From assembly GCA_965113315.1 (NCBI GenBank), contig OZ220367.1: 64,000 nt of DNA; one strand, written 5' to 3'. Position numbers and translations under genes: made by a program. A model generated the notes under the pieces. It did not search any database and was not told the origin of the DNA. It saw nothing but the letters and a program-made list of their open reading frames with translations. The DNA is from Podarcis vaucheri. Taxonomy: Eukaryota. Shown here piece by piece: positions 293-57,900 of the stretch (position 1 is its first letter; each line of letters opens with the position of its first letter).

Positions 293-3200
293 ATGTCTCT
301 GCCGCTGTATAGTTGGAACATTAATGGCGCGAATTCCCCGGAAAAACGCAAAAGGATTTTCCATATTCTAAAGAAAGAAAATTTGGACATAATTTGTTTG
401 CAAGAAACCCATGTGACCAGGATACACAGGAAGGTGTTAATAAATAAAAGATTAGGCCAAGAATTCATCTCATCAGATAGAGTTAAGAAGAGAGGCGTGG
501 TGATCTACGCCAAGGAGAATTTATCACCAAAATTTTTGTTCAAAGACGAACAAGGAAGAATTCTGGCTATTGAAATATCAACTCAAGGAGAGAAAGTTTT
601 GATATTAGGAATTTATGCACCAAATGAGGGGAAATCAGAATTTTATAAGAAGCTGCATGAGACACTACTGGACTACCTGGACTATTCCAACATCATTATG
701 ATGGGAGATATGAATGGGGTTGTCTCCACTTTTATGGATAAGTCACAGAATCAGAATTTGACCAAAGATGGAAGACTACCAAAAACTTTCTTTGAACTAA
801 CTGACAATATGGATTTAATTGATTTATGGAGGACGAGAAACCCCCTAGGTAAAGAAGGAACTTTCTTTTCTGAGGCCCACCTGTCATGGACAAGAATCGA
901 CCAAATCTGGGCAACTAGAGGGCTGGCACCTAAGACTACAAAAATAGAAATCTGCCCAAAGACTTGCTCCGACCACAATGCTTTGAAAATGGAAATGAAA
1001 TTTACTACTGCCGACTCCTTTAGATGGAAAATGAATGACAACCTGTTAAGAGATCAAGAGATTGTAAAGAAGGCCCAAAAAGCCTTAAAGGACTATTTTG
1101 AAATCAACTTGAATACCTCGGTGGAAAAGAGAATAATCTGGGACGCAAGCAAAGCTGTCATGAGAGGGTTCCTGATACAACAGAATACGATCAAGAAAAA
1201 ACTTTGGAATGGTAAAAAGGACAAGATATTGGAGAAGATAAGAGATGGAGAGAAAAAATTAAGATTGAATCCAAAATCAAAAGAGACTTTAAGAGAAATC
1301 AAATTTCACCAGTCACAATATGCGAAATTGATTAACCAAGAAGTGGAATGGAAAATCAAACAAATGAAACAAAGATCTTTTGAATCTGCGAATAAATGTG
1401 GGAAACTGCTAGCTTGGCAGTTGAAAAAGAGACAAAAATTAAATTATGTTACCAACTTAGAAGTTGAAGGGAAAAACATTCAGAAACCGGGAGAAATTAG
1501 AAAGTGTTTCCAGAAATATTTTAAAAAACTGTATACACAAGAATCCGAGGAAGCAACTGAGATAGAACAATTTTTGAAAGACAACGGCCTACCAAAACTA
1601 TCTCAAGAGAAGAGATCAATCTTGAATTGTAAAATAACACAACAGGAAATCGAGGATGCCATTCAGAATATGCAACTAGGCAAATCTCCAGGCCCTGATG
1701 GACTCACCTCCAAGTACTACAGGATGTTAAAAGACTATTTGATACAACCATTAATGGAGGTTTGCAACCAGATTATGGGGGGAGGGAGGGCACCAGATAC
1801 GTGGAAAGAAGCATTCATCACACTGATACCTAAAGTGGAAACTGAAAAGACTCAACTTAAGAACTACCGCCCCATCTCACTCCTAAACGTGGATTACAAA
1901 ATATTTGCGGATGTTTTGGCTAACAGATTTAAAAAAGTATTAAATGAAGTAATCCATAAGGACCAAGCAGGCTTTCTCCCAGGTAGACATTTGTTTGATA
2001 ACACCAGGAATATTATTGATACTCTGGAACTTTTACAAACAAATATTAACACCAAAGCAGTGTTAATTTTTATTGATGCGGAGAAGGCCTTTGACAACAT
2101 TTCTTGGAAATTTATGAAGAAAAACTTGGAAGGGATGGGAGTGGGAAGGGGGTTTGAGAATGGAATAGAGGCAATCTATTCAGAACAAAAAGCTAAGTTG
2201 ATAGTGAACAAAGTGGTGACAGAAGAACTTCATATTGAAAAAGGAACACGCCAGGGGTGCCCCTTATCCCCTTTATTGTTTATTTCAGTCCTGGAGGTTT
2301 TGCTGAATATGATAAGGGAGGATCGGCAGGTACAAGGAATACGGGTCGGAGCGAAACAATATAAACTGAAAGCATTTGCAGATGACTTGGTTTTAATATT
2401 ACAGGAGCCAGAACATAGTACAAAAAGAGTTTTGGAATTGATTCAGAAATTTGGTCGGGTGGCGGGTTTTAAGCTGAACAAACAAAAAACCAAGGTGTTA
2501 GGGAAAAACTTGACAGTTACTGAAACAGAGGGGTTTCAGAAGGAAACAGAACTAAACATTGTTAAAAAAGTGAAATACCTGGGGGTCAATCTGTCTTCTA
2601 AGAATTTGAATCTATTTAAAGATAACTATGAAAAATGTTGGTCAGAAGTCAAAAAAGATCTAGAAATTTGGTCAAGATTGAAACTATCCTTGTTAGGCCG
2701 AATTGCAGCTATAAAAATGAACGTTTTGCCAAAGATGTTGTTCTTGTTTCAAGCCTTGCAGATCGTGGACAGAGTGGAATGTTTTGGAAAGTGGCAGAGG
2801 GATATTTCTAGGTTTGTCTGGCAGGGCAAAAAGCCCCGAATAAAGTTTAAAATACTAACCGATGCAAAGGAGAGAGGGGGGTTTGCCCTGCCAGACTTAA
2901 GGTTATATTATGAAGCTGCGGCCTTCTGCTGGATGAAAGATTGGATTTTATTGGAAAACACTGATGTCCTAGATCTGGAAGGCTTCAATAATTCGTTAGG
3001 TTGGCATGCGTATTTGTGGTATGACAAGGGGAAAACACATGGAATGTTTAAAAACCATATTGTCAGAAAAGCAATATATATGGTCTGGAAAAAATACAAA
3101 GACTTATTGGAAAGTAAAACTCCGAGGTGGATTTCACCAATAGAGGCCAAAGCTCGGAAAACACCCAATATGGAGGCATATTGGCCGAAATATTGGGAAA

Positions 3201-4033
3201 TAATAGAAAACATTGGAGGTAATTGGAGGTTGCAGAGCTTTGAAAAATTAAAGGATAAGGTGCAAAATTGGCTACACTATGCCCAAATTAATGAGGTTTT
3301 TAAGCTAGATAAAAAAACAGGATTCCAGGTGGAAAAATCGAAACTTGAGACAGAGTTGTTAGAACCAAAGACCAAGGTATTATCGAGAATGTACAACTTG
3401 CTGCTTAAATGGAATACTCAGGATGAGACAGTTAAATCAGCCATGATAAAATGGGCTCAAGACATTGGTTACAATATTATGTCTGAGGACTGGGAAAGGT
3501 TATGGACCACCGGTATGAAGTTTACGGCATGTAATGCCTTGAAAGAAAACATTATGAAAATGGTATACAGGTGGTACATGACCCCAGTCAAGCTCGCTAA
3601 GATATACCATTTGTCTGATAATAAATGTTGGAAATGCAAGGAGGCTGAAGGGACATTCTTTCACCTCTAGTGGACTTGTCCAAGATTGAAGGCCTTTTGG
3701 GAAATGATCTATAACGAGTTAAAAAAGGTGTTTAAGTACACCTTCCCCAAGAAACCAGAGGCCTTCCTTCTGGGCATTGTCGGCCAGAAGGTGTTAAAAA
3801 AGGATAGAATTTTCTTTATGTATGCTACAACAGCAGCAAGAATTCCCATCGCTAAGCATTGGAAGACCCAAGATTTGCCCACACTGGAGGATTGGCAGAC
3901 GCAATTGATGAACTACATGGAACTAGCCGAGATGACTGCAAGGATCCGAGACTTGGGAGAAGAGGCAATGGAGGAGGACTGGAAAAAATTTAAAGACTAT
4001 CTGCAAAAGTATTATAAGTTGTATGAAACATAA
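293..4033 (+). pseudogene. L1 ORF2 (APE endonuclease + reverse transcriptase + C-terminal Cys/His domain) with one premature stop at 3668-3670
   Basis: SWNING, LQETH, GDMN and SDHN endonuclease motifs; GPDG, YRPISLLN, QGCPLSP, FADD and YLG RT motifs. ORF 293-3670 and ORF 3686-4033 are in the same frame, separated only by a TAG in CWKC...HL*WTC. Confidence 0.95.
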
Positions 4034-6774
4034 GACGCCGTATGATTCGGAACGTTAGCCCCAGCAACGAAATTTATTATCTATGAAATTGATAACATTC
4101 ATGAAAGAATCAAAGTTTAAATGGGTAAAAACGAAATTATGTTATATTTTTAGAGTAAATGGAGAATAAGAGATTTAAACTTAAATTGCAACTGAAAATA
4201 TAAAGAAACACACGAAATAAGGGTATAATTTGCTGATAACTTTATTATCAAGAATGCATTATGTGGGAGATGTGGGGAAGTCCAATGGAAATTTGAAATA
4301 AGTTGTTGAAATGGTTGTGATTTTCTGTTCTTTTTTTCTTTTTTTCTTTCTATATGTCTATTCTTTTGTTCTTTCTGTAATTTGGAAAAAATGCAATAAA
4401 AATTATTATAAAAAAAAACAGAATGCTTGAAATTTTTAACTGACTGGCTAACATGTGAATAATAAAAACAATAGTCTCTGCCTGCCAACTTCTGACCCAA
4501 GTAACACAATACAAAAGGAGAAAGAGATGAGAAAGGAAGAGGAGGCAAGCACACACCAGTTACTATCTAAGTTTAAGGACTAGCTGTTTAGGGAGATGTT
4601 GTTCTCATAGCAGGACAGGTAGAAAGGCCCTTCCTCTCATCTCTCTCTTTGCTGTGGCCTGATAGAATGGTTGCTGCCATGTGGTGGTTGAGGAATAAGC
4701 CTGATGGAGTTGGTCTTCCAACAGAGTTGATAGAGTGGCCCTGCTTCCCAGAGTTCCCTCTGAATTAATCAGCCATTAGCTTCACTAACAACTGCTTTGT
4801 AAACGAATTCCTTTTTGATGTTTATGGATGTTTAAAGAATCTATGTCCCAATCAGGCACTGTTATTGTCCAATGTGAACTCATTATGGCTCATTGGGTAC
4901 AGAGGCGTTTTATTTCCATAGGAAAGCTCTTGCCGACATGTGACAGATATGCTGTGTGAAAGGTTGCTGTGAATACCTGCTTTATATGCCTTGTGACTGG
5001 TAAATGGTCACACTGAAGTGGTTAATCGTTGGACCTCTGCTATCTACTCTCGCAGAAGTCAAAGAGCAGTGATTTAAGAGGGTTGGGGGATGAGAACTCG
5101 GATACATCACTCATCTTAAATCTACAGCCATGCGTTGCAGTAGAAAATTAGCTTATTCTTCAAGCCACAGAGATAGACTGAATTGCTTAATAACCAGAAA
5201 GTGATGAGAGATAGAAAATTGAGTGCCGGGGAAGGAATCAAAAGCATTCAGTGTGTTCCCTTTTGCAAGCAAACGGAGCCAGATGAAAACAGAGAGGCTG
5301 AAAAGCTGCTGAAGGTTCAGCCTACACAAGCAGGCTCTCTTCTGTACTTTCCCCCCTGCTTCTTTAAAATGGGATGTGAGGCTCCCTCAACACAGAATCC
5401 ATCTACCGCACAAAGAATACATCCCCACTTGACAGGAATGAACAGGTGTAACAGGCTGCTTTCTCTTACCATCTGACAACACTGCTGACTCAAATATTTT
5501 TCTGTACCCTTAAAAAGAATCTGCTTATACTGTCTGATGAAACTATCCCTTTGTTTTGCTTTCCCCCCTGCCGTTTATTTTTGTGGCTATTGGATCCCTC
5601 CTTTTAAAGCGTAAACTCACTGGTTTATTTTTATGCTCATTACTGAGGAGGAAAACAACCCTGACACTTTGCACAGAGGAACAGCAGCCTTATCATTAAA
5701 GCTGGGTCAGGAGGAAAGTCCTAGCTGCAGCAAGAGCTTCCTCTTTGGCTGCTTCTTGAATGGTTTACTTGACTTGAATTCACAATGGCAGAAGCCATGG
5801 GAGCTGGTTCAGAATGTCAGCAACCTCTCTGCTCAGGGTTGCCCATTACAGCACTATTAGGCCATTGTTTAAAGATTATAGATTGGGTTTTGTGTGTCAG
5901 CTGGCATATGGTGGGATGTTCTGTTACCATGTGCCCTGGTTGACACGCCTGTGTGCACTTTTCAGACACGGACCCTTAACATTTGGAGAGGAATTTTGAA
6001 TGTTGTGTTAATGCTGGTGTTCAAGTGCTACTGAAATCTGATGTTCTTTTTAAAGAGAATTGAAGAGGCCTGAGACGATTGTATTCCAGAGGAGAGCAGT
6101 GAATTTTATCAAGAAGAAATTAATGAAACAATTTATTTAAAGCACTTAATCCTAACCAGAATTTATGGTGCTAATAAATGCTCAGAACTGTTCATTATTC
6201 TGGCAACTATAGGTAAAAGCAGGAGCTAAGCAGAAAAGCAAACATGTGCTGTAAAATATCCCAATTCTCTAGTAAGAATATGGAAAGGGGGTGGGGGAGA
6301 GGAAGTTGGGCACAAATAGATCGTTTTAAAGTGATTATTTTTGCAAATGCTAGGAAGTTGGGCACAATTAGAGGGTTAAAAATTGATGTAAGTGTTAGGG
6401 GTTTCTGGGATGAGATGGGTAGAGAAGAGAGCAGGTTTCCAGGGGGTGCAAATAAGTGAGGATAGCAGAGCAGAGGAAGAGGTGCTTTTCTTGGGGCAGG
6501 GGCACAGTGTGTCATGAGGGAAGGTATGTGAATAATGCAGTGGTTTGGCAAAGAGTTAAGAGCTGAAGAGCTTATGCCTTAGGTGTGCAGAAAAACTAGG
6601 TTAGAAACAGAACAAAATTCGAGGGGGTGTGGAAATAGAGAGGTGATAACTTTTGTTGGCTTATGGACCAACTAAGTAAAGAGGAAGGAATTAGTGGAAC
6701 TCGTTACCTTTCATTATCTGCATAGCTGACTGGTGGTGAAGTGGAGGCAATTGGGCTCCAGTAATGAAAAGGGA

Positions 6775-32170: not shown

Positions 32171-32791
32171 CAGTTCTACAGCACAGTCATTTAGGGAGTC
32201 TAGGCATTTTACCTTTTGTCATAGGTGGAACGCATATGCAGCCATTTTATGTGAGGATACTTGAAGCCACCCATTACTACAACAAAATTCCCATGATATG
32301 CTTATATCGGTCACCAGAAATTCTTTGTTGCATTGAAAATGCAAACTAGGCCCAGGTGGCAGTGCAATTTTGTTTTGAACAATTTTGAAGTTGGCAAATA
32401 TTTGGTTTATTTTGGAAAGTATGCCCTTGGTTAATGCAAATCATTGACTTTGGCTACTGAGGGATGCTTTTAAAAGCTATGAACACTTAATTCATATGTG
32501 TTCCTTCCAGCTGAACTAATGAATGTATACAGTAAACAATAGAGAGCACAGCTAAAGTAAAAAGAGCCAAATTTGTCTGGGAAGAGAATGTTTTGCCAGG
32601 TTCAGTTGTGTATCCTCTTTAAAGGGCTCCAGCTACTTTACTGTTGCCAGAATGGTACACACACCCACACATCCACACACCCACACAGAGCGAGAACCTA
32701 AGACCATTTTTAACAGCATACTTGCTAGGCCTGCCTGAGGGAGGAGCTGGACTCCAGGACAGTAACCTGCCTTCCCCAAATACCATGTAGT

Positions 32792-32851
32792 AGAAGAAGA
32801 AGAAGAAGAAGAAGAAGAAGAAGAAGAAGAAGAAGAAGAAGAAGAAGAAGA
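32792..32851. repeat. (AGA)n microsatellite, about 20 units
   Basis: Read directly. Confidence 0.97.
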
Positions 32852-35499
32852 TTCTCCTCCTCCTCCTCTCCTCTCCCCTCCCCCACCCCCAGTTTGGTCC
32901 TACTTCTACTCATTTGTAATTTCTGCTAGTTTAGTATCCGTAGTACATTATCTGAAGAATGTAGTGAGACTCAACTGATAGCTCCATCTGCTTGAACTAA
33001 CATACGAGAATGACTTGATTCTGTGGTTAGTCGTACGGATAACTGCTGATAGTCTGAAACAGCACTGCTGTAAAAACCTTTCAATTTGGATCATGAACCA
33101 CAGCCTGCTTAGCCATTCTGTCTACAGCTCAGCATATTTGTCTGTGGAAAAGTGGTCTCCTGCTTCAAATTCTGGCATTGTGTGTTCTATGCCTCTACAA
33201 TAAAACGGAGTAGGGCACTTCAATTGATCAGGCGCTAACTATGTAACTATTGTGGATGCTGGTTTTAGTCCAGGGCTACTGCTTTAAATTTCTATTCCGC
33301 CTTTCCACACAATAGTGTTCAAGATAACAACAACAAATGAGATACAATGCAAAATAAAGTAATTGCACAAAATACTCAGCTGTTTATAGAACAAGTAAAA
33401 AACAGATCAATAAAGCAGTGGCTATTTAACAAAAGGCAGGCAGTAGATGAAACAGATCAGTTGTTGAGCATCACCAGCAGTTTGAATTGCACTTGGAAAT
33501 AGACTGTTGGCCAGTGAAGATGTTGTATGAAGAAAGTAACATACTGCCTATAACCAGCCCCGGTTAGCATCTTGGCTGCAGCATTCTGAACCAGCTGAAG
33601 TTTCGAAGCACTCTACATAGGCAACCCTACACAGAGTGAAAATACAGTAGTCCAGATGAAATGTAACCAAGACATGTGCCATATGGCCAGATCTGAAATT
33701 TCTAGGAATGGACACTGTACACTAGCCATAACTGTGAAGGGCCATTCATGTAATGGTTCTAATGTATGTTCCTTAATAAATACCTTAAATGAAACTAGAT
33801 TCAGATGCATTCACTACTTCTTCATTTGCTGAGATAACACGATGTTTGTTAATGTGTTGAGTGCTCTAAGGAACATTAGGCTGAATTGAAAAGAAGTTGG
33901 GATTTTTTTAAAAAGTAGAAACCATGGAAACTTGGACAAAGCTTCTCTTGGTCAGGAGTAGTGTTTATGCACAATTCCCTTCCCTTGTCATTTGTGCAGT
34001 TATATATTACTTTTTACCTTGCTTTCTCGCTTCCCCAAGGCCTCACCTAAATGTTCAGCACACTATGAAAGACTAAGTGTTGCAGTAAATTACATAATAG
34101 TTCAGAAAGTATGCAAATTTAATTTAGTAAATACTCGAGTGAGGAATTGGGATTTTGGTGGAATTGAGCTGAACACTGTTAATGGATCTCAGATGAATAT
34201 TGTGGGTGGTCCAGTCACAGTCTAGAAATCTAGAAACAGTTACAAAATGTGCTGAGTGTTTTGTTTTTATTTAACATCTAATTATTTAGTTACGTACTTT
34301 GTCTTTGCTGCTTCTAGGAATTAATTCCAGCAGAGACTTCAGCTGCATCAGCAAATTCTTAAGATGCTGTCTGCAGACTGATACAATTTTTCAGCTTTTT
34401 CTGTATTAATTAGAACACTCTTGTAAAATTTGTCAATTATCTGTTGTTTTATGTACAGATGCAGTCACTTCTTTCCAGTTAAAGTGATAAGTCTTTCAAT
34501 TACAGGAAGAAATTATATTAGCAGCTAATAGTTTCCAGAGACATGCTTTTGGATAATGGATTGGCATGTTAAGTGTTGGACCATTTTTGTGACATACAGT
34601 GCTTAATTAACTTTATTTGTTTTGGAAGAATGCATAGGAAATAGCTGTTTAAATTAAACATTGGGCTGATCTGTCCCATCTAGCTGTATTCTGGAAGGTG
34701 AACACTGCAGGTCTAGCAGTTCATTATATTTTGCTTTGAAAGGGTTTTGGTTAGGATGGTCTTCCCCAACCTGGTGTGTGCCAGATGTGTTTTGGACTAT
34801 AACTTCCATCAGCTTTCTGTTGCAGGGATAATATAGGTTGCCACTTTCAAAAGAAACTAAGGCAATTGCATCTTTGGCCTATCTTCTCAGCTGTTTCTGA
34901 AATAACCTCATGACAGATATTACTGCGAGTTCGTATGACCCCCTTTGTGTGCTCAAATTAGGAGGGGAAAAGCAAAATAGGGGCACTAATTGCACAACCT
35001 TCCTTGTTTCCAAGGTAGCTATTAAAATCTTAACACTTTTCGATTTCCCATATATGCAGTTCCACAGTCCCCAGAGCTACAATTATGTCCTTGCCGTGGG
35101 GCGTTTATTTTTTCTTGTTACTAAACCTATAAGAGAGGTCATGGAGTGAAGGCCTATTCAGTGATAACATGGTGAAAGATAGATCTAATCTTCAACAATA
35201 CATACCTGTGTGAAAATGGTTACAAGTTCCTTCTTAAAGCGAGAATCTGACGGGTTTCCTCCTCATAAGGAACATCATTTTCAAATGTTGCAACAAACAG
35301 GCTATCTTTACATGTGCACAGCATTTAGACTATATGCATAGCATTTAGACTATAGCCCCACCCTGAAGTACCCTTGATGGGTGCATAGCATGGTTAAAAC
35401 CTGTGACGTTTTATATAGAAGTGTTCCTGATATGCAGAATGTAATAATCTGAATTTTTTTAGTGCCAATTACCCAAATCAGGCACATTCATAGCACACA

Positions 35500-50434: not shown

Positions 50435-53234
50435 CCTTACAAGTTCCTTCTCAAGTAGATGCTTTTTAGGGTGAATTTTGCATCAAGGCCAGAGCCAGAC
50501 TTCCTTCTTTAGGGACGAGGAGGCTGTGGGAAGTTTATACCTGTGCATGGGGGAGAGAACATGATCGATACTGAGGACTATTTTGTTGAGTCCAATGGCT
50601 TTTGAATTCAACAGCCAAAGCAATTCTATGCGAAAGAGTCAATTGCTGGCTCTTGAATCCTATATCTAGAATGGAGTGTAGATGCCTAGCAAATATTTAG
50701 ACTGGCAGCAGGGCAAGATCTTAAACCTGCCGTGATCAAGCAAGTCATGTGACATGAAAGGAAGGAATGTCCTATGTAAACTATTGAAGGCCCATCTGAT
50801 TCCAGTTGTACAGCATGACAAATAATTATATATGAAATTTCTATGCCCTGCAGAAAAATGTTAGCCCTTTGATCTAAGCAGAGCGTCTCGCCTGCATCAA
50901 AGGAACAAGGCACTTTGTCCTAGGGTACTGTGAGCCAACTCGGTTTCAACAGTGTTTGCGTCTAAGGATTTGCTTTTGTGTTGTTGAGGTGTGCCAAAAG
51001 CACATGGGACCTGTTCCGTTTTTCAAAGTGGATGGGGAGTCTGAGCATTGTCTTCTGGTGGAGGTCTCTCATCATCATCATCACCACCATCTGGCTGGGT
51101 TTCACCAGCCACTCTTAGACCTTATCTGTTTTTGTTTCTGGCGTGCTTGCTTTGCCTCTGTCATATTTGCTGGTTTTGGAGCCAGCTGTAGCACTTGAGG
51201 TCGGCCAAGTGGTACAGCTGAACCATATGGCGTGAAAGCATGGATAACATGATACCCTTCAAGACAGTGACTTGCTGCCCTACCTTGTCTGCAGGAAAAC
51301 ACACCCACACATAAAGCAGCACTTGGTGCATAAGGATCATGATGGATGATGGGCCTCTAGCATGGGAATCCATCTGGGGTCAGCCTGGCACTTTTGCAGT
51401 TTTGTATTCACATTTCCTGCCTTAAAGCACCCTGTTGTCTAGCTGCAAGCTGCCATGTGGCACAACACATTTCACCGTGTTGGCATAAAATAAGGCTGCC
51501 AGCCTTAGCTCAGAACTCTCTGTGTCCCTGATTCACAGGTGGCCAGTTCCTCAAAGGGGGTGTGCAAGATTGCACTTCACAACATGGAAACAATGTAAAG
51601 CCATGTTCCCTCTCCCTGCAGCCCCAGCCTTTGGCTCTTGTTGAACTATTAGCTTCCAGCAAAGCATTTTTCACACTTCTGGTTAGCAAGCTGCATTGAT
51701 ACACCTTTTGTGGGGTTGGGAAGCGGCACAGCATTTTGGGGGGAGGGGCTCATTTGACTTGTCTCCATACAGAAGATGATTCCTGTTGCTTCTGTTGATA
51801 TGCATTCCACATCTATGCATATTTACACACGTTGGCCCCGCTCAGTTCAGTGGGACTTACTGCCTAGTAAATGTACACAGTGGTGTTGTGGGGATTCTTT
51901 TGCACACATACCCCTTTTTGCAGAGCATGCATATGCAACGTTGGGGAAATCATTGCTTTAGACTAGAGAATGAATTCAGGCGCTCCGTTTTGTTGATAAA
52001 AATGTGCCCTGTCTCAAATGGTTTACACTGGCCTCTCAGTCTTAGAGAATAATTCAGGCCCAGGCCATTCCAGAGACAAAGATAAATGCATTTCCCACCC
52101 TACCTTGCTAATCATTCTGGGCAGAGTTGTGCCACCTCAGGCCTTTGATTCATTTCCCTTAAACGCTTCCCTTCCTTTCTGATCTACCTAGTTGCTGATG
52201 AAGTGCAGCCTGGTTCAGGCTCCTTCTCCTTTGCCCCTCTCGGACTAATTGAATTAAGCGGATGGGAAGTGAATCCAATTGACTAGATTAAATGAGCTGG
52301 GCACAGATCTGGGAAGAAATCAGGGCCTTGGAAGCTGAGCAAAGGAGCGCTTCCTCTGGCCACAGCTCTTCCGCTGCCCCATGAACTGCACCCCCCTAGG
52401 TGCCGTCACTTCACCACCCTTTGCCTTTTGCTTAACCTCTCATCCCTGGTCTTCCAGCAGCCCCTGCTGGGAAAGTGCAATGGCTCCCGTCTCCTCAGAC
52501 ATTTCCCCCCTCACTCTCTTCTGTTGCGCAGAGCCTCCTTACTCTCCTAGGTAATTAGTGGTTAATTAGCCAAGCTGTCTGACTTCGGCATGGCCCCCTC
52601 CACTCACGCTTCCCTCACGCTGGGCCTCAGGGCTGTGAGTGTGTAATGAACTGCAGGCTGGGGAAGGCCCCAGCCACATTTGCTCATTTAATTTCTGCTG
52701 CATCAGCTTACAAGCACATTGGATTTGAGGCTCTTGCTGTGCTGGAAGGGGCTTGGGACCTCCAAGCTGTTAGGTTTAAGCTGCGCTCCGGGGAGCAAAC
52801 GCTCTGGTGACAAGCACCAGCTGGGGCTGGAGGCTGGTGAGCACTGTCCTCTTCAATGCCAGCATTCCCAGACTGGCTTTCTCTCCCCGCCCCGCCCCCC
52901 ACTCCCGCCTCCAAGAAGAACTGTCCCTAGATACTTCCATACATCTGCTGCTAGTGGAGGGAAGAGCATGTTTGTGAGGATGAAACACACAGTCTCCATT
53001 TCCCTCTTTCCCTTTCGAAAGTGAGTGGAGACGCGGTGCAAACGCCTCTAGAAATAATGATAATCTGAAATGGAAGGTTTTGCCTTTTACACTTGACATT
53101 CCTATCTGGTCCATGTTTAGGATCTCCCAAGGTCTGGGTAACATTTTCATAGGTGCCGACTCCATGGGGCTTGAGGGGGCCCGAGCCCCCTCAAAAATTC
53201 GTTTGGGGGGGCTCTGCCCCCCCAATAATCTCGG

Positions 53235-53500
53235 GCGCCCCTCCAGCAGAGCGCCGCCGCCGCGCTGGCTCTGCCTGTCGACGCTTGGCGCGTCCGCGGC
53301 TTTTATAGGGCGCCCAGCGCGCACCAGCTCGATAACGGGCACCGGCGCAGCGGGGGGCGCCGGGCCGGGGGCGAGGGGCGGCCGGCCTGTCTCCTTGGCA
53401 ACCCCATTGAGCAGCGCCGGCTCCCCCGGGAGGGCCATCCCCCCGCGCCGCCGATCGCCAACACCGCCGGCGCTGTGGCTGCCGGAGCCCGAGCCCGAGC
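53235..53500 (-). pseudogene. TAL1: Captured fragment of a TAL1/SCL N-terminal coding exon (no bHLH domain)
   Basis: RRGGMALPGEPALLNGVAKETGRPPLAPGPAPPAAPVPVIELVRAGRPIK matches the TAL1 N-terminal motifs LLNG(V/A)AKE and P(P/V)VIEL as recalled from human and chicken. Preceded by a (TTCC)n tract + CTGACAG acceptor; truncated at the transposon arm. Confidence 0.8.
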
Positions 53501-53513
53501 CTGTCAGTCAGCC

Positions 53514-53540
53514 AGGAAGGAAGGAAGGAAGGAAGGAAGG
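53514..53540. repeat. (GGAA)n microsatellite; polypyrimidine tract of the captured acceptor on the minus strand
   Basis: Read directly. Confidence 0.9.
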
Positions 53541-53965
53541 AGAGAGAAATGGGGAGGGAGACGAGGGAGGAAAATTGCGCGCAGGGTGAAGAAAGGAGAA
53601 GGGCGAACGAGACGAGCTTCCAACCCAAAAAAGGGCTGGAAGACTTGGAGGATGAAGGATCGGGAAAGAAAGCGACGCCTTCCCCGCCCACGACGTCGCC
53701 CACTTGTCATTGGCAGCGCAGCGGGTGCCCAGAGAGGCTGGGCACCGGCGCAGGGCCGCTCCGCAGCCGCGGAGGACAGCTGCACGGCTAGCAAGGTGCG
53801 CCGCGTAGAGCGCGGCCCTTGTGTGGCCCGGTGGCCACGCAAGCTCGGGTGGGGACCCCCATGCGAATCTAAGACGGGAGAAGAGGGCAGAGCAAAGGGG
53901 GTCCCTTCCCCAACCTCCAGCTCTGAGACTTCCCTGCGCCCCAGAAAAGCGAAAGGATTTTCTCT

Positions 53966-54983
53966 CTCTCTTTTTTTTATAAATATTTTATTAAGTTTTC
54001 AAATACAAAGTTAGAAACATACACTGAAGAATAAAGTAAAAGAACAAGAAAAAGAAAAAAAGAAAAAGAAGAAAAGAAAACCAACCATTCAACACATTTT
54101 TTATATAACTAACTGGACTTCCTCGCATCTCCCTTACCCTGCATTCTTTATAATAAAGATATCAGCAAATTATTACCTTGTTTCGTACCTTATTTTGTAC
54201 TTTTCAAATACTATACCTCTAAATTTAACATACTTTTCATCAGTTACTTATATCTTAAATTAAACATAGTATTACCTTAGATTTTGACCTTTTCTTACTT
54301 AAAATATAATTTCCTGTTTCCCAAATCTAATTGCTGAAGCTATAGTTTCCGAATCGTGTAAATTTTTAACATTCATACAACTTATATTGTTTTTGTAAAT
54401 AGTCCTTAATTTTTTTCCAGTCCTCTTCCGTTGTTTCTTCTCCCAAATCTCGGATTCTGCCAGTAATTTCAGCCAGTTCCATGTAGTCCATCAATTGCGT
54501 CTGCCACTCTTCCAGTGTGGGCAAATCTTGTGTCTTTCAATATTTTGCGATAAGTATTCTTGCTGCTGTAGTTGCATACATAAAGAAAGTTCTATCCTTC
54601 TTTAACCCTTTCTGGCCAACAATGCCCAAGAGGAAGGCCTCTGGTTTCTTGGGAAAGGTATACTTAAATACATTTTTTAACTCATTATAGATCATTTCCC
54701 AGAAGGCCTTCACTTTTGGACAAGTCCACCGGAGGTGAAAGAATGTCCCTTCAGCCTCCTTACATTTCCAACATTTATTATCAGACAGGTGATATATTTT
54801 TGCAAGTTTGACTGGGGTCATGTACCACCTATAAATCATTTTCATAATATTTTCCTTCAAGGCATTACATGCCGTGAATTTCATTCCGGTGGTCCATAAC
54901 CTTTCCCAGTCCTCAAACATGATGTTATACCCAATATCCTGAGCCCATTTTATCATGGCTGATTTGACTGTCTCATCCTGAGT
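53966..54983 (-). mobile_element. 5'-truncated L1, same family as 1-4418, nested inside the hAT element
   Basis: ORF2 C-terminus nearly identical in protein to copy 1 (TQDETVKSAMIKWAQDIGYNIM...), premature TGA at 54537-54539, AATAAA (minus strand) at 53987-53992, A-tail, 10-bp TSD GATTTTCTCT (53956-53965 / 54984-54993). Confidence 0.95.
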
Positions 54984-57900
54984 GATTTTCTCTTCAACCT
55001 GCCCTCCATCCTCTTGCGGAAAACTCTTTGCCTGCCCTGCCCTGCCCGTATCTCGTTTTTGCTTTTTAATTCCACACACGCACCCTTCGGACTTCGTGGC
55101 AATCGGGCGCGCGGGTGCGTTTCCTAAGAGAGTGAGGACCCCCGCCTCCTCCCCACCTGCTCCCTCGCCAGCCAGCCAGCCGCGTGCCCTAGCAATCGGC
55201 TGGATCTCCCTTCAGCAGGCCGGGCTCACAACTCGGCCCAGGGACCCCCCAGCAGCGGATCTCCGGCCCAGCTGAAGAATCCGGCAACAAGCCCCCTCCT
55301 CCCCAATCGCTCCGTCGAAATACGCTCCAAAACCCCCCAGATAGGCCGCCGGCCGCCATGTCTCGTGGCGCCCTGAGCGAGGGTCTCTCCCCAACACCGC
55401 CACCTCGAACTGTGTTCTCCCGGCTACCCGAGCGAAGCAGCGGCAGGACCCCGGTATGGGCCCCCCCAATATTTTTTATAAGTCGGCGCCCCTGAACATT
55501 TTTATTAGCTGCTTTGAAAATTGAGTGTGTCTGGGTCCCCACACACTCTGGATTGTTTAACCTTTTCCTCCAAACATCCATCTCCTGATGTAATTTCCCC
55601 CACACCCTGCCCCAAACTATTTTTTAAAGTCAGGAACACCATCTGCACCTTTTCCTTCCCCCGCCCCAATGCCTCACTACTCATGGAGATAATAACAATG
55701 GGGGGGGGGAGGGATTTACATAAGGGAAAGGACTAAAACCCTGTCCAGAGTAGCCACATGAGGGTGCTTATTTAGTTTTCTCCTTCTCCTTAACACATAC
55801 TGTAATCCTAATCCCAGATCTCCAACATGCCAAAGTTACACAAGAACAGCCCTATACTACCCAGCTCCCTTGCTGATTTGGAAACTCAAAACATTTGCTA
55901 TCACCATCTTGCCACATTTTAAATCCCCGATAGGCTGCAATATTTGCCAGCAAACATGGAGTTCCTGTCCATGAAACTGACAAGTAATCTATACACTGCC
56001 ATTCATACTTAGCAGAGTTTTTAAAACTCACCTATCCAGCCTTAAAGATTATTATACCAAGTAATATAGAAGCAGAGGACAGGAAATGAACCTCCCTTCT
56101 TGAAATGCTTCCTGAATTGCGGAGGTGGCTGTGGCCTTCCCTGCAGAATGGGATGCCAATCTTGCTCATAGGTAGCAAGGCTTTAGGTTAAAATCAAACC
56201 AGGTATTATTGTTGTTTATTAAATATCTATACTGCCCTTTATCCGAGGATCACAGGGCTGTTTACAATATAAAACACAACACTATTCCCCACTTCAAAAA
56301 GAGGAAAAATTAATTATGGTAAAATCAAAATGGAACATCAATTGTCCAAGATTTAGATCATGGTGATTTAATATCCTGTGCTTGACTTTTCCCACATAGT
56401 TAAGCCATAAGAATGGAAATCTGCAATTAGCTAAAGGTGTGCTTAATAATGGTGATCAATGCTCTGTCTTTACTTAATGAGCTGTTAAATTGCATCCCTG
56501 AGATAGATCACTAAGACCAGCCTGCCATTGTAGCTGGGAGGTGAAGTGCTGTGTTGCAATGGTGAGGGCATTGTGCTCTCTTTCTAACACAGATACACAC
56601 CATGCTTTCCTCCTAGCAGGACTGAAAGGACTTGATAGCAATGTTCTTCATTTGCCCTCTTGATTTACAAAGTCCCAGTGTTTTGGTCCTGAAGGGTTAC
56701 TATGAATATGGTCTCATAAGTTTCCCACTAGCCTCAAACACTGCAGCGAGACTGTATCTCCTGCTGCCACCCCCCATAGCCTTCTTTTATATCCAGGTGA
56801 TTGTAAAGGCCTTCTAAGTGCACAACAAGCAACCCAATTGCTTTCGAGCTCAGGTTGATTCAGCCTTCCAGCTGCAAGCTTTGAACATAATGCTCTTGCA
56901 AGATATGCTGGTCTATTATTGAGGTGTATGTGATGGATTTGTTATCTGATCTGTACCAGCATTTGAATAAGCACTCTTTCACAGCTGCTTTTGTTTTAAT
57001 ACAGCCAAACAGCAGCAACAAGTGATGGAAGATGTATATAACTGCATGCTGTATCTATTTTGGCTATGTTTGCTAATACATCAAGGCTGTTGGAGTCCAT
57101 TCTTTTTGTGTCTAAGCCTTTGTGAAATGCTCCAGGCCAGAGTAAATCAAGTAGCCACTGGAGGTTTAGCATTGAGGTGAAAGCTATTTCAGACAATGCA
57201 GGTATGACTCAAAGCAGCTTTACGTCCTGCAAAGAAGTCACTAAACAGGAATGATTCTGTCATCTTAAAAAATGGTCTTTATTTCTTAAATTCAAATGTA
57301 TGCATGGTACACTCCCTTCTATTGATCTTGTAACAAACTGAAAGAAATGCAGAGAGGAAGAGTTGGTTTTGCGCACAGAGCAATTAACAACCAGAACAAG
57401 TAAAAACTACCATCTCCAACAAACCAAATGGAAAGTGTACCCAAATGGGTATGTGGTTTGTTTTTTTTTGGTGCCAGGAAGAATGAATTATTCCCACTTG
57501 GGGGGGGGCAGTTCACACATGCATGAACATCACTTGATGACATGCAACTGACAAGTCTTGTCTATGCATGCAGCAGAGTGAGCTGCTTGAGTTCTGAGGT
57601 TACATAATGGATTTTACCACTTCCAACTAGGGCTGAGGAAGGAAACCACTTTGATGTTCAAAATAAATAAATCCCTGCAAATAGCAAAGTATGAAGCAGG
57701 CTGCACCAAAAGCTTTATTCCTTCCATGTTATATGTCTGTATGTGTTTGTCTATATGTCTTTACTGTTTATATGGAGGAGTGTGGGATTTTGCCTAGGGG
57801 AGACCTGAAATTGCACCCACCCACCCCCTACACCCGCAGTATGAAATGGTGCAGTCTGTCACTGTCACAGGATTCCAGTTCTAAATATATGAACCTACTC

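What the first reader, a model, noticed from the sequence alone, without database searches (positions are those of the whole stretch)
53140..55502. Pack-type hAT transposon that has captured host gene/CpG-island DNA in a lizard
Seen: an isolated CpG island is bounded exactly by imperfect 14-bp TIRs and a perfect 8-bp TSD (AACATTTT). It has no transposase. Once the nested L1 is removed, it holds about 1.2 kb of GC-rich cargo containing coding-exon and promoter-like DNA. Known: 8-bp TSDs with short CA-initial TIRs indicate hAT elements. Gene capture by TIR elements is common in plants (Pack-MULE, Pack-CACTA) and much less documented in vertebrates. Inference: the whole cargo arrived by cut-and-paste transposition, so a gene-fragment-shuttling hAT family may exist in lacertids.
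Basis: partly seen in the sequence, partly recalled or inferred. Interest (0 to 1): 0.92.

Follow-up and report, generated by a model that had tools for sequence, protein, structure and literature searches.

The report
Lizard hAT transposon carrying TAL1 fragment
A 2.3-kb cut-and-paste (hAT-type) transposon with no transposase of its own has inserted here in one wall-lizard lineage, carrying a 78-codon piece of the blood-development gene TAL1 plus CpG-island-like DNA; by read depth it is one of hundreds to thousands of copies, an unusually amplified example of a gene-fragment-carrying ("Pack") transposon, a kind already known in animals.

Summary
An 8-bp duplication (AACATTTT) and 11/14 inverted ends (CAnnGGnGCCGACT) bound the CpG-rich block 53148-55494.

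A related species (organism F) has a contig that runs from 53139 straight into 55495, with a single AACATTTT.

The interior carries host DNA. 53262-53495 (minus strand) is an internal piece of the first coding exon of TAL1, 72/78 residues identical to Podarcis TAL1.

No transposase is present. The L1 fragment has its own 10-bp duplication. It appears to belong to the unit that was amplified, because its junction with the cargo is multicopy in a species that lacks this insertion.

The whole element is repeated. Summed contig depth suggests roughly 300-700 cargo copies in the source species, 1,500-2,000 in a second and about 17 in a third. The arms run to thousands of copies. Shorter members lack 53263-55138.

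So this is one decaying copy of a young, amplified Pack-hAT family, not a one-off capture at this locus.

Pack-TIRs are documented in animals (Tan 2021), so the kind is known; the copy number is unusual.

This scan has flagged the same phenomenon on other DNA of this genome, with other cargoes. I did not check those notes.

The hAT assignment rests on the TSD and TIRs only. The donors of the remaining cargo are unknown.

The parts
53140..53147 (.). Left copy of the 8-bp target-site duplication, AACATTTT
   Evidence: The empty site in organism F keeps one copy.
53148..53161 (+). Left terminal inverted repeat, CATAGGTGCCGACT
   Evidence: 11/14 match to the right TIR.
53148..53243 (+). Left arm. 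It looks like a whole mini-MITE: an outer TIR, two palindromic G7C/GC7 units (53171-53195 and 53202-53226), and an inner, crippled copy of the right terminus (GCCCCCCCAATA...GGGCGCCCCTC).
   Evidence: D19, I1; DNA fold z = -3.3. Depth in the bin holding it is about 7,000-14,000 times the unique depth.
53244..53261 (.). GC-rich linker, also present in the short family members
   Evidence: Joints 53260/53262->55139; sequence.
53262..53495 (-). Captured internal piece of the first coding exon of TAL1 (residues 36-113 of Podarcis raffonei TAL1). It is cut inside the exon at both ends.
   Evidence: 72/78 identical to Podarcis, 64/76 to Rhineura. The family-majority letter at 53374 gives the TAL1 residue Pro.
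53496..53955 (.). GC-rich cargo of unknown origin, with (AGGA)7 at 53514-53541, a GC box and an inverted CCAAT at 53709. No coding match.
   Evidence: Multicopy (X10 record 11, depth 300, 4 differences).
53956..53965 (.). Left copy of the L1's own target-site duplication, GATTTTCTCT
53966..54983 (-). 5'-truncated L1 3' end: ORF2 C-terminal CCHC region, 3'UTR and A-rich tail
   Evidence: -: 81% identity to window 3413-4349.
- shared ORF2 C-terminal peptide.
- its junction with the cargo is multicopy in organism F (X10 record 14, depth 336).
54984..54993 (.). Right copy of the L1 target-site duplication
54994..55138 (.). Cargo of unknown origin; the end of the block that short members lack
   Evidence: joints ending at 55139.
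55139..55459 (.). GC-rich internal part shared by the long and short members. It contains an exon-1-like ORF whose ATG (55358) is private to this copy.
   Evidence: (depth 110-180k; majority A at 55359), and (no protein match).
55460..55494 (-). Right arm, with the GC7 motif and the right TIR (reverse complement CAGGGGCGCCGACT at 55481-55494)
   Evidence: The bin holding it has depth thousands of times the unique depth.
55495..55502 (.). Right copy of the 8-bp target-site duplication, AACATTTT

Best explanation
53148-55494 is one copy of a young, multicopy, non-autonomous hAT-type DNA transposon of wall lizards (a Pack-TIR or 'Pack-hAT').

**Layout**
- A mini-MITE-like left arm, whose inner end is crippled.
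- A mosaic GC-rich cargo. It begins with an antisense 234-bp piece of the TAL1 first coding exon and includes a 5'-truncated L1 fragment.
- A 320-bp GC-rich segment that is shared with shorter family members.
- A second right end.

**How it moves and how it arose**
- A transposase encoded elsewhere in the genome (inferred, not seen) recognises the CAGGGG... termini and the G7C/GC7 subterminal motifs. It cuts the unit out and pastes it into a staggered 8-bp cut.
- Here that happened at AACATTTT, in the lineage of the source species, after its split from organism F (shown by the empty site).
- The TAL1 piece was acquired once by an ancestor of the family. Template switching during repair or replication is the more likely route. 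Fusion of neighbouring insertions is a possible route for the three-ended backbone. Both routes are inferred.
- The L1 then inserted, and the whole unit amplified to hundreds or thousands of copies, very unevenly among sister species.
- This copy is now decaying by CpG transitions and shows no sign of a function of its own.
For: - **TSD, TIR and island boundaries:**
- **Exact empty site in organism F:** one 2,293-nt contig runs 52179-53139 and then 55495-56274. A second run of F ends its match at 53139. Organism B's contig starts its match exactly at 55495.
- **Filled site in organism A:** a contig crosses the junction 53139/53140 (record 1).
- **TAL1 identity:** 18/18 hits are TAL1, E = 2e-22; 72/78 identical to Podarcis and fewer to other squamates. 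The family-majority base at 53374 restores the TAL1 proline.
- **Multicopy:** unique flank depth is 90 / 84 / 19 in X1 / X4 / X10. Cargo bins are 50-67k / 137-179k / 170-580. Seven to fifteen distinct contigs cover each variable site.
- **Near-identical copies in F:** organism F contigs at depth 300-525 match the TAL1 piece, the unknown cargo, the L1 3'UTR, the L1-cargo junction and the right part with 0-4 differences (records 10-15).
- **Short members:** joints 53240/53260/53262->55139.
- **No transposase:**
- **Decay:** 6 of the 11 listed differences from the family majority are CpG transitions.
- **hAT form:** lizard hATs have 8-bp TSDs and CAGGGG-type TIRs (PMC3014272).
- **The kind and the capture models are documented:** PMC8277862 and PMC8903248.
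Against: - No other copy was read end to end, so distinct TSDs of sibling copies were not seen.
- The tool warns that summed contig depth is not a copy number, so the counts are rough.
- The hAT assignment lacks a transposase partner. The single TSD does not fit the common nTnnnnAn preference.
The donor relation therefore rests on protein-level identity.
- About 920 bp of the non-L1 interior has no identified donor. Only 18% of the non-L1 element is shown to be host gene.
- Two protein searches aimed at sibling copies or other donors were blank.
Confidence: 0.85

Rival explanations
1. Native CpG island: a local promoter that happens to be flanked by a chance 8-bp repeat and weak inverted ends.
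For: My own estimate is about 0.3 pairs of an 8-mer repeat with an 11/14 TIR by chance in this window, given the 8,549 pairs. The ends alone are therefore weak evidence.
Against: Organism F has the locus without 53140-55494 and with a single AACATTTT. All parts of the island are multicopy. The TAL1 piece sits far from any TAL1 gene structure.
Confidence: 0.01
2. Assembly chimera: repeat-rich sequence wrongly placed here.
For: The element is a high-copy repeat, which is what assemblers misplace. The best DNA holder (X1) may be the very sample the window was assembled from, so it is not independent.
Against: An X1 contig crosses the left junction by 32 nt with 1 difference in 1,672 nt (record 1). 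The perfect TSD is what a real insertion leaves and a chimera would not.
Confidence: 0.03
3. The long form came first. The cargo block was already in the original element, and the short members (53262->55139) are deletion derivatives. On this reading there was no stepwise capture into a pre-existing short element.
For: Internal deletion is the usual origin of short non-autonomous hATs. The joints carry 1-10 filler letters, as abortive gap repair leaves (table 5c). The GCC repeat at 53253-53262, retained in the short forms, could itself be a TAL1 remnant.
Against: The short-form breakpoint (53260/53262) coincides to within 1-2 nt with the end of TAL1 homology (53262). That is expected if foreign DNA was inserted there and unlikely for a random deletion.
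Confidence: 0.3
4. Not a hAT: another TIR superfamily with about 8-bp duplications (P, Merlin-like, MULE-like) mobilises it.
For: No transposase partner was seen. The TSD AACATTTT fits neither nTnnnnAn nor nnnTAnnn.
Against: An exact 8-bp TSD with short TIRs that begin CAGGGG is the form of the listed lizard hAT families (PMC3014272). P and Merlin ends look different (my own knowledge).
Confidence: 0.1
5. Apart from the TAL1 piece, the GC-rich interior is the family's own sequence (remnant UTR or subterminal DNA of the autonomous parent), not captured promoters or exons.
For: - There is no protein or RNA-family match for 53496-53955, 54994-55138 or 55139-55459.
- 55139-55459 is shared by the short and long members.
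- The exon-like ATG is private to this copy.
Against: High CpG content with CCAAT and GC boxes is host-promoter-like. Other notes of this scan report first-exon cargoes between similar arms (unchecked).
Confidence: 0.35

Closest known systems
Animal Pack-TIRs, especially multicopy Pack-hATs such as Pack-hAT-N8_XT of Xenopus tropicalis (Tan et al. 2021, PMC8277862)
   Same: A non-autonomous hAT with TIRs and an 8-bp TSD that carries a few hundred bp of a host gene, is moved by transposition, and is absent at the orthologous site of a relative. Multicopy cases tend to carry GC-rich DNA.
   Different: That survey found only 4 multicopy cases in 100 animal genomes, and the frog example has three copies. 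By summed contig depth, this cargo is present hundreds to thousands of times and differs roughly 20- to 100-fold between sister species. The cargo here is a mosaic that includes a LINE fragment. No squamate case is mentioned in that paper's main text (0 occurrences of 'lizard' or 'reptile').
Plant Pack-TYPE elements formed by fusion of neighbouring insertions (Gisby & Catoni 2022, PMC8903248; Pack-CACTA model of Catoni 2019)
   Same: A three-ended layout: a complete small element with a disabled inner end, then internal DNA, then a second outer end. Family subgroups differ by an internal gene-derived insertion of 160-280 bp.
   Different: This is an animal host. The TAL1 piece is cut inside an exon on both sides and is flanked by unrelated DNA and a microsatellite. 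That fits template switching better than mobilisation of one contiguous host segment.
Young high-copy non-autonomous hAT families of Anolis carolinensis (Novick et al. 2010, PMC3014272)
   Same: A lizard host, 8-bp TSDs, 12-16-bp TIRs beginning CAG(G/T)G, hundreds to more than 1,000 copies with 0.3-3% divergence, and often no matching autonomous partner.
   Different: None of the listed TIRs equals CAGGGGCGCCGACT. That paper reports capture of extraneous DNA only for a Helitron family, not for hATs.
Rice and maize Pack-MULEs
   Same: GC-rich gene fragments carried between TIRs and amplified. Antisense fragments of the parent gene are common (my own knowledge, and the discussion in PMC8277862).
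   Different: A different superfamily (9-11-bp TSD, long TIRs) and a plant host. Membership is excluded by the TSD length.

Membership tests
hAT superfamily (non-autonomous member) | 8-bp target-site duplication | tested here: met
   A perfect AACATTTT on both sides. The empty site has one copy.
hAT superfamily (non-autonomous member) | Short terminal inverted repeats beginning (C/T)AG | tested here: met
   The right end is CAGGGGCGCCGACT and the left end is CATAGGTGCCGACT, matching at 11/14. The form is the same as in the lizard hAT families.
hAT superfamily (non-autonomous member) | Mobilised by a hAT transposase (BED finger, DDE/RNase H fold, hAT dimerisation domain) of an autonomous element with matching ends | not testable with these tools
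   No lizard genome collection was on hand. There is no transposase in the element or elsewhere in the window with these TIRs.
hAT superfamily (non-autonomous member) | Target preference nTnnnnAn (Ac/hobo type) or nnnTAnnn (Buster type) | tested here: inconclusive
   The single TSD AACATTTT fits neither pattern. One site cannot define a preference.
Pack-TIR / Pack-TYPE transposon | A TIR element without a transposase, bounded by TIRs and a TSD | tested here: met
Pack-TIR / Pack-TYPE transposon | An internal segment copied from a host gene whose parent can be identified | tested here: met
   53262-53495 matches TAL1 residues 36-113 at 72/78 identity, E = 2e-22. The parent was identified at protein level only. 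DNA of the TAL1 locus could not be fetched.
Pack-TIR / Pack-TYPE transposon | The captured segment moves with the element: absent orthologous site, several copies | tested here: met
   Empty site in organism F. The TAL1 segment lies at 17 times the unique depth in F and at about 300 to 2,000 times in A and B. Distinct TSDs of sibling copies were not seen.
MITE (the left arm as a mini-element) | Under about 600 bp, with TIRs at both ends, high copy number and no coding capacity | tested here: inconclusive
   The 96-bp left arm has an outer TIR and an inner end resembling the right terminus, and sits in a bin at very high depth. No free-standing mini copy with its own TSD was read.
Processed (retro-)copy of TAL1 | Spliced mRNA-derived sequence with a poly(A) tail and an L1-type TSD | tested here: not met
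   The piece starts and ends inside one exon, has no tail, and abuts transposon DNA.

The most novel reading that the evidence does not exclude
Wall lizards may host a recently or currently active Pack-hAT system on a scale not reported in any vertebrate. One MITE backbone would repeatedly pick up CpG-island or 5'-exon DNA. At least one derivative, this TAL1-carrying 2.3-kb form, has been amplified to hundreds or thousands of near-identical copies, with differences of roughly 20- to 100-fold between sister species. This would seed the genome with promoter-like modules and antisense TAL1 coding fragments that could yield chimeric transcripts or small RNAs against TAL1.
Probability: 0.35. Interest if true: 0.8.

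Novelty: new member of a known kind. Interest (0 to 1): 0.58.

Why it matters
Gene-fragment shuffling by cut-and-paste transposons is a major force in plants. In animals it is regarded as rare and mostly single-copy: Tan 2021 found 4 multicopy cases in 100 genomes.

A lizard family that carries a TAL1 exon piece and CpG-island-like DNA at hundreds to thousands of copies would offer three things:
- It would be the most amplified vertebrate example.
- It would give a natural system, with filled and empty sites among sister species, for dating and for testing capture models (template switching against fusion of neighbours).
- It would raise testable questions about dispersed promoter-like DNA and antisense fragments of a key haematopoietic regulator.

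For this locus alone the consequence is modest. It is one decaying insertion.

Tried and rejected
- **TAL1 locus DNA.** No DNA-level comparison of donor and copy was made.
- **Exon-like ORF.** phmmer of the 45-aa exon-1-like ORF (55358-55492) against 1.84 billion proteins gave 0 hits. Its ATG is private to this copy, since the majority base at 55359 is A. The 'captured first exon' reading of that ORF is rejected.
- **Sibling copies called as proteins.** The search for homologous proteins on residues 40-97 of the ORF that runs through the end of TAL1 and the mini-MITE found none. A blank here says little.
- **Pfam.** Nine element ORFs gave only a sub-threshold DUF hit, on the L1 ORF.
- **Rfam.** 51500-57400 gave nothing.
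- **Other copies in the window.** A TIR pattern search and blastn found none. The only match was the L1.
- **Literature search for the TIR string.** Only unrelated hits. No paper was found on Podarcis hAT capture.
Rejected. In real TAL1 the exon continues upstream (P0001; P0006 reads through). Homology here ends inside the exon, so the CAG is incidental.
- **The search of earlier findings by sequence.** Blank, which means nothing.
- **Gene context.** Whether the site lies downstream of ARMH3 was not verified. Stop-free segments of the window showed no obvious exons.
- **X15.** This run is labelled 'RNA?'. It covers the flanks evenly at low depth and cannot be taken as evidence of transcription.

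Full report
**1. The observation**

The sequence is as described.
- AACATTTT occurs at 53140-53147 and 55495-55502.
- Directly inside lie CATAGGTGCCGACT and, on the other strand, CAGGGGCGCCGACT, which match at 11 of 14.
- These are the only two matches to that end pattern in the 64 kb, apart from one 2-mismatch chance hit.
- The window holds 8,549 pairs of identical 8-mers that are 300-5000 bp apart. Only this pair has at least 11/14 inverted identity directly inside.
- By my own binomial estimate about 0.3 such pairs are expected by chance. The ends alone are therefore suggestive, not proof.
- The ends coincide with a sharp composition boundary. GC is 56-77% and CpG observed/expected 0.67-1.0 inside, against 0.12-0.30 in the flanks.

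**2. Proof of insertion**

I laid contigs of four public runs on 51500-57400.
- In organism F (run X10), one 2,293-nt contig at single-copy depth (18.9) matches 52179-53139 with its letters 539-1502. It continues without a break at 55495-56274 with letters 1503-2293. That is the locus minus 53140-55494, with one AACATTTT.
- A second run of F (X15) has a contig whose match ends at 53139.
- A contig of organism B (X4) starts its match exactly at 55495, after 19 letters that do not fit the element. This suggests an empty site in B but does not show it.
- In organism A (X1) a contig crosses from the flank 32 nt into the element. X1 is nearly identical to the window and may be its source sample.

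The block therefore arrived as a unit in the lineage of A.

**3. What it carries**
- No ORF has a transposase domain, and there is no Rfam match.
- The minus strand of 53262-53495 encodes 78 residues that match TAL1. All 18 database hits are squamate TAL1, with a best E-value of 2e-22.
- Identity is 72/78 to Podarcis raffonei residues 36-113, 71/78 to P. muralis, 64/76 to Rhineura and lower to snakes, geckos and Anolis. The donor was therefore a lacertid TAL1.
- In the real gene the exon continues on both sides (P0001; P0006 is a single read-through ORF). Here homology stops at a microsatellite on one side and at transposon DNA on the other. This is a DNA-level capture of an exon-internal piece. 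It is neither a retrocopy nor an exon with its acceptor.
- At 53374 nearly all other family copies carry the base that restores the TAL1 proline. This fits the direction TAL1 to family to this copy.
- The rest of the non-L1 interior (53496-53955, 54994-55138, 55139-55459) is GC-rich with CCAAT and GC boxes. It has no identifiable donor.
- The tidy ATG ORF at 55358 gave no hit among 1.84 billion proteins. Its ATG is a private mutation of this copy.

**4. The L1**
- 53966-54983 is a 5'-truncated L1 3' end on the minus strand. It is 81% identical to the near-full-length L1 at the start of the window.
- It has its own 10-bp duplication, GATTTTCTCT.
- In organism F, which lacks this insertion, a contig at depth 336 spans the junction between the L1 truncation point and the cargo (54948-55112) with no substitutions. 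Another, at depth 525, matches the L1 3'UTR part exactly (records 12 and 14).
- The L1 therefore entered an ancestral element and has since been carried along.

**5. A family, not a singleton**

Summed contig depth, all:

| Region | X1 (organism A) | X4 (organism B) | X10 (organism F) |
|---|---|---|---|
| Unique flanks | ~90 | ~84 | ~19 |
| Cargo bins 53273-53863 | 50-67 thousand | 137-179 thousand | 170-580 |
| Right internal part | 110-137 thousand | 159-181 thousand | 1.0-1.4 thousand |
| Bins holding the arms | 190-630 thousand | 228-769 thousand | 17-44 thousand |

- Seven to fifteen distinct contigs cover each variable site.
- The tool warns that summed depth is not a copy number. As a rough guide it implies about 300-700 cargo copies in A, 1,500-2,000 in B and about 17 in F, with thousands of arm copies in all three.
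- F's copies differ from this one by only 0-4 letters per roughly 170-240 nt. They carry a 28-nt stretch at 55191 that the A and B copies lack, which serves as a subfamily marker.
- Joints 53240/53260/53262->55139 reveal short members that lack 53263-55138.
- This copy differs from the family majority at the 11 best-supported sites that the table shows inside the element, leaving out one in the L1. The tool did not show 260 more rows. Six of the 11 are CpG transitions. It is a decaying copy and was probably methylated.

**6. Mechanism**

*Shown:* cut-and-paste-type insertion with an 8-bp duplication; mobilisation of the whole composite; amplification.

*Inferred:*
- A hAT transposase is supplied in trans. 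The 8-bp TSD and CAGGGG-type TIRs are the form of the lizard hAT families listed by Novick et al. (PMC3014272).
- The left arm looks like a complete mini-MITE whose inner end is degenerate. It reads ...GCCCCCCCAATA...GGGCGCCCCTC, against the true right terminus ...GCCCCCCCAATA...GTCGGCGCCCCTG. The element is therefore three-ended. This is the layout predicted by the neighbouring-insertion fusion model for Pack-TYPE elements (PMC8903248).
- The TAL1 piece is exon-internal and flanked by unrelated DNA and a microsatellite. Its boundary (53262) coincides with the short-form joint. [quoted passage not shown] (PMC8277862).
- The opposite order, with the long form first and the short forms arising by deletion, is not excluded.

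**7. Comparison with what is known**
- Pack-TIRs are documented in animals. Tan et al. found 370 in 100 genomes, 208 of them hAT. Only four were multicopy, and their example has three copies. The multicopy ones favoured GC-rich DNA.
- Young hAT MITE families of more than 1,000 copies are known in Anolis.
- This is therefore a new member of a known kind. What is unusual is the scale of amplification of a gene-fragment-carrying form, its uneven spread among sister species, and its mosaic cargo that includes a LINE.
- I found no paper that describes it.

**8. Earlier notes of this scan**
- The scan's index holds 34 notes on 'Pack-hAT' elements in this same genome. They report other cargoes, including PKD2, POLR2H, CDK5R2, CRPPA and RANBP9. 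Several follow-ups called them rare but not unprecedented.
- One note on this window named TAL1. I tested it: the TAL1 identity holds and the splice-acceptor reading does not.
- I could not read the other loci, so I have not shown that they share these arms.

**9. Limits**
I therefore read no sibling copy with its flanks, no TAL1 locus DNA and no autonomous partner.
- The gene context (ARMH3) was not verified.

Noticed in passing
window 293-3670 (+), continuing to about 4350: A near-full-length L1 with an open 1,125-aa ORF2 (endonuclease, RT and C-terminal CCHC region). It belongs to the same L1 lineage as the fragment inside the hAT element but is only 81% identical to it over 3413-4349.
   Followed up: partly
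window 56031-56424 and 51697-51893: Other high-copy repeats in the flanks. Depth is 6-40 thousand at 56031-56424, with hundreds of loose ends at 56215 and 56274, and about 760 at 51697-51893, against 90 for unique DNA. They were not classified.
   Followed up: no
window 55512-55556: A contig of run X1 skips 43 bp just right of the insertion (joint 55512->55556, letters between unknown). This may be an indel polymorphism or an alignment artefact next to the element.
   Followed up: no
window 55191: Family copies in organism F (runs X10 and X15) carry 28 extra letters here that the copies of organisms A and B lack. This marks the subfamily that expanded in A and B (table 4).
   Followed up: partly
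window 51500-57400 (flanks): A run of only about 100 Mb that is labelled 'RNA?' (X15, organism F) covers nearly all of the unique flanks at an even depth of 4-7. That is too much for shallow whole-genome data. The locus may lie in a transcribed intron or UTR, or the run may be a capture library. This is unresolved.
   Followed up: no
window 53237-53290 and 53715-53770: Family variants with small internal replacements or deletions: 49-52 bp replaced by GCGGTG-type filler, and 34-48-bp skips. They are seen in several contigs of organisms B, F and A (tables 5 and 5c).
   Followed up: no
window 32640-32900: A long simple repeat: a poly-T/poly-A run next to a (GAA/GAG)n-type run that gives poly-E, poly-S and poly-F in translation.
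   Followed up: no
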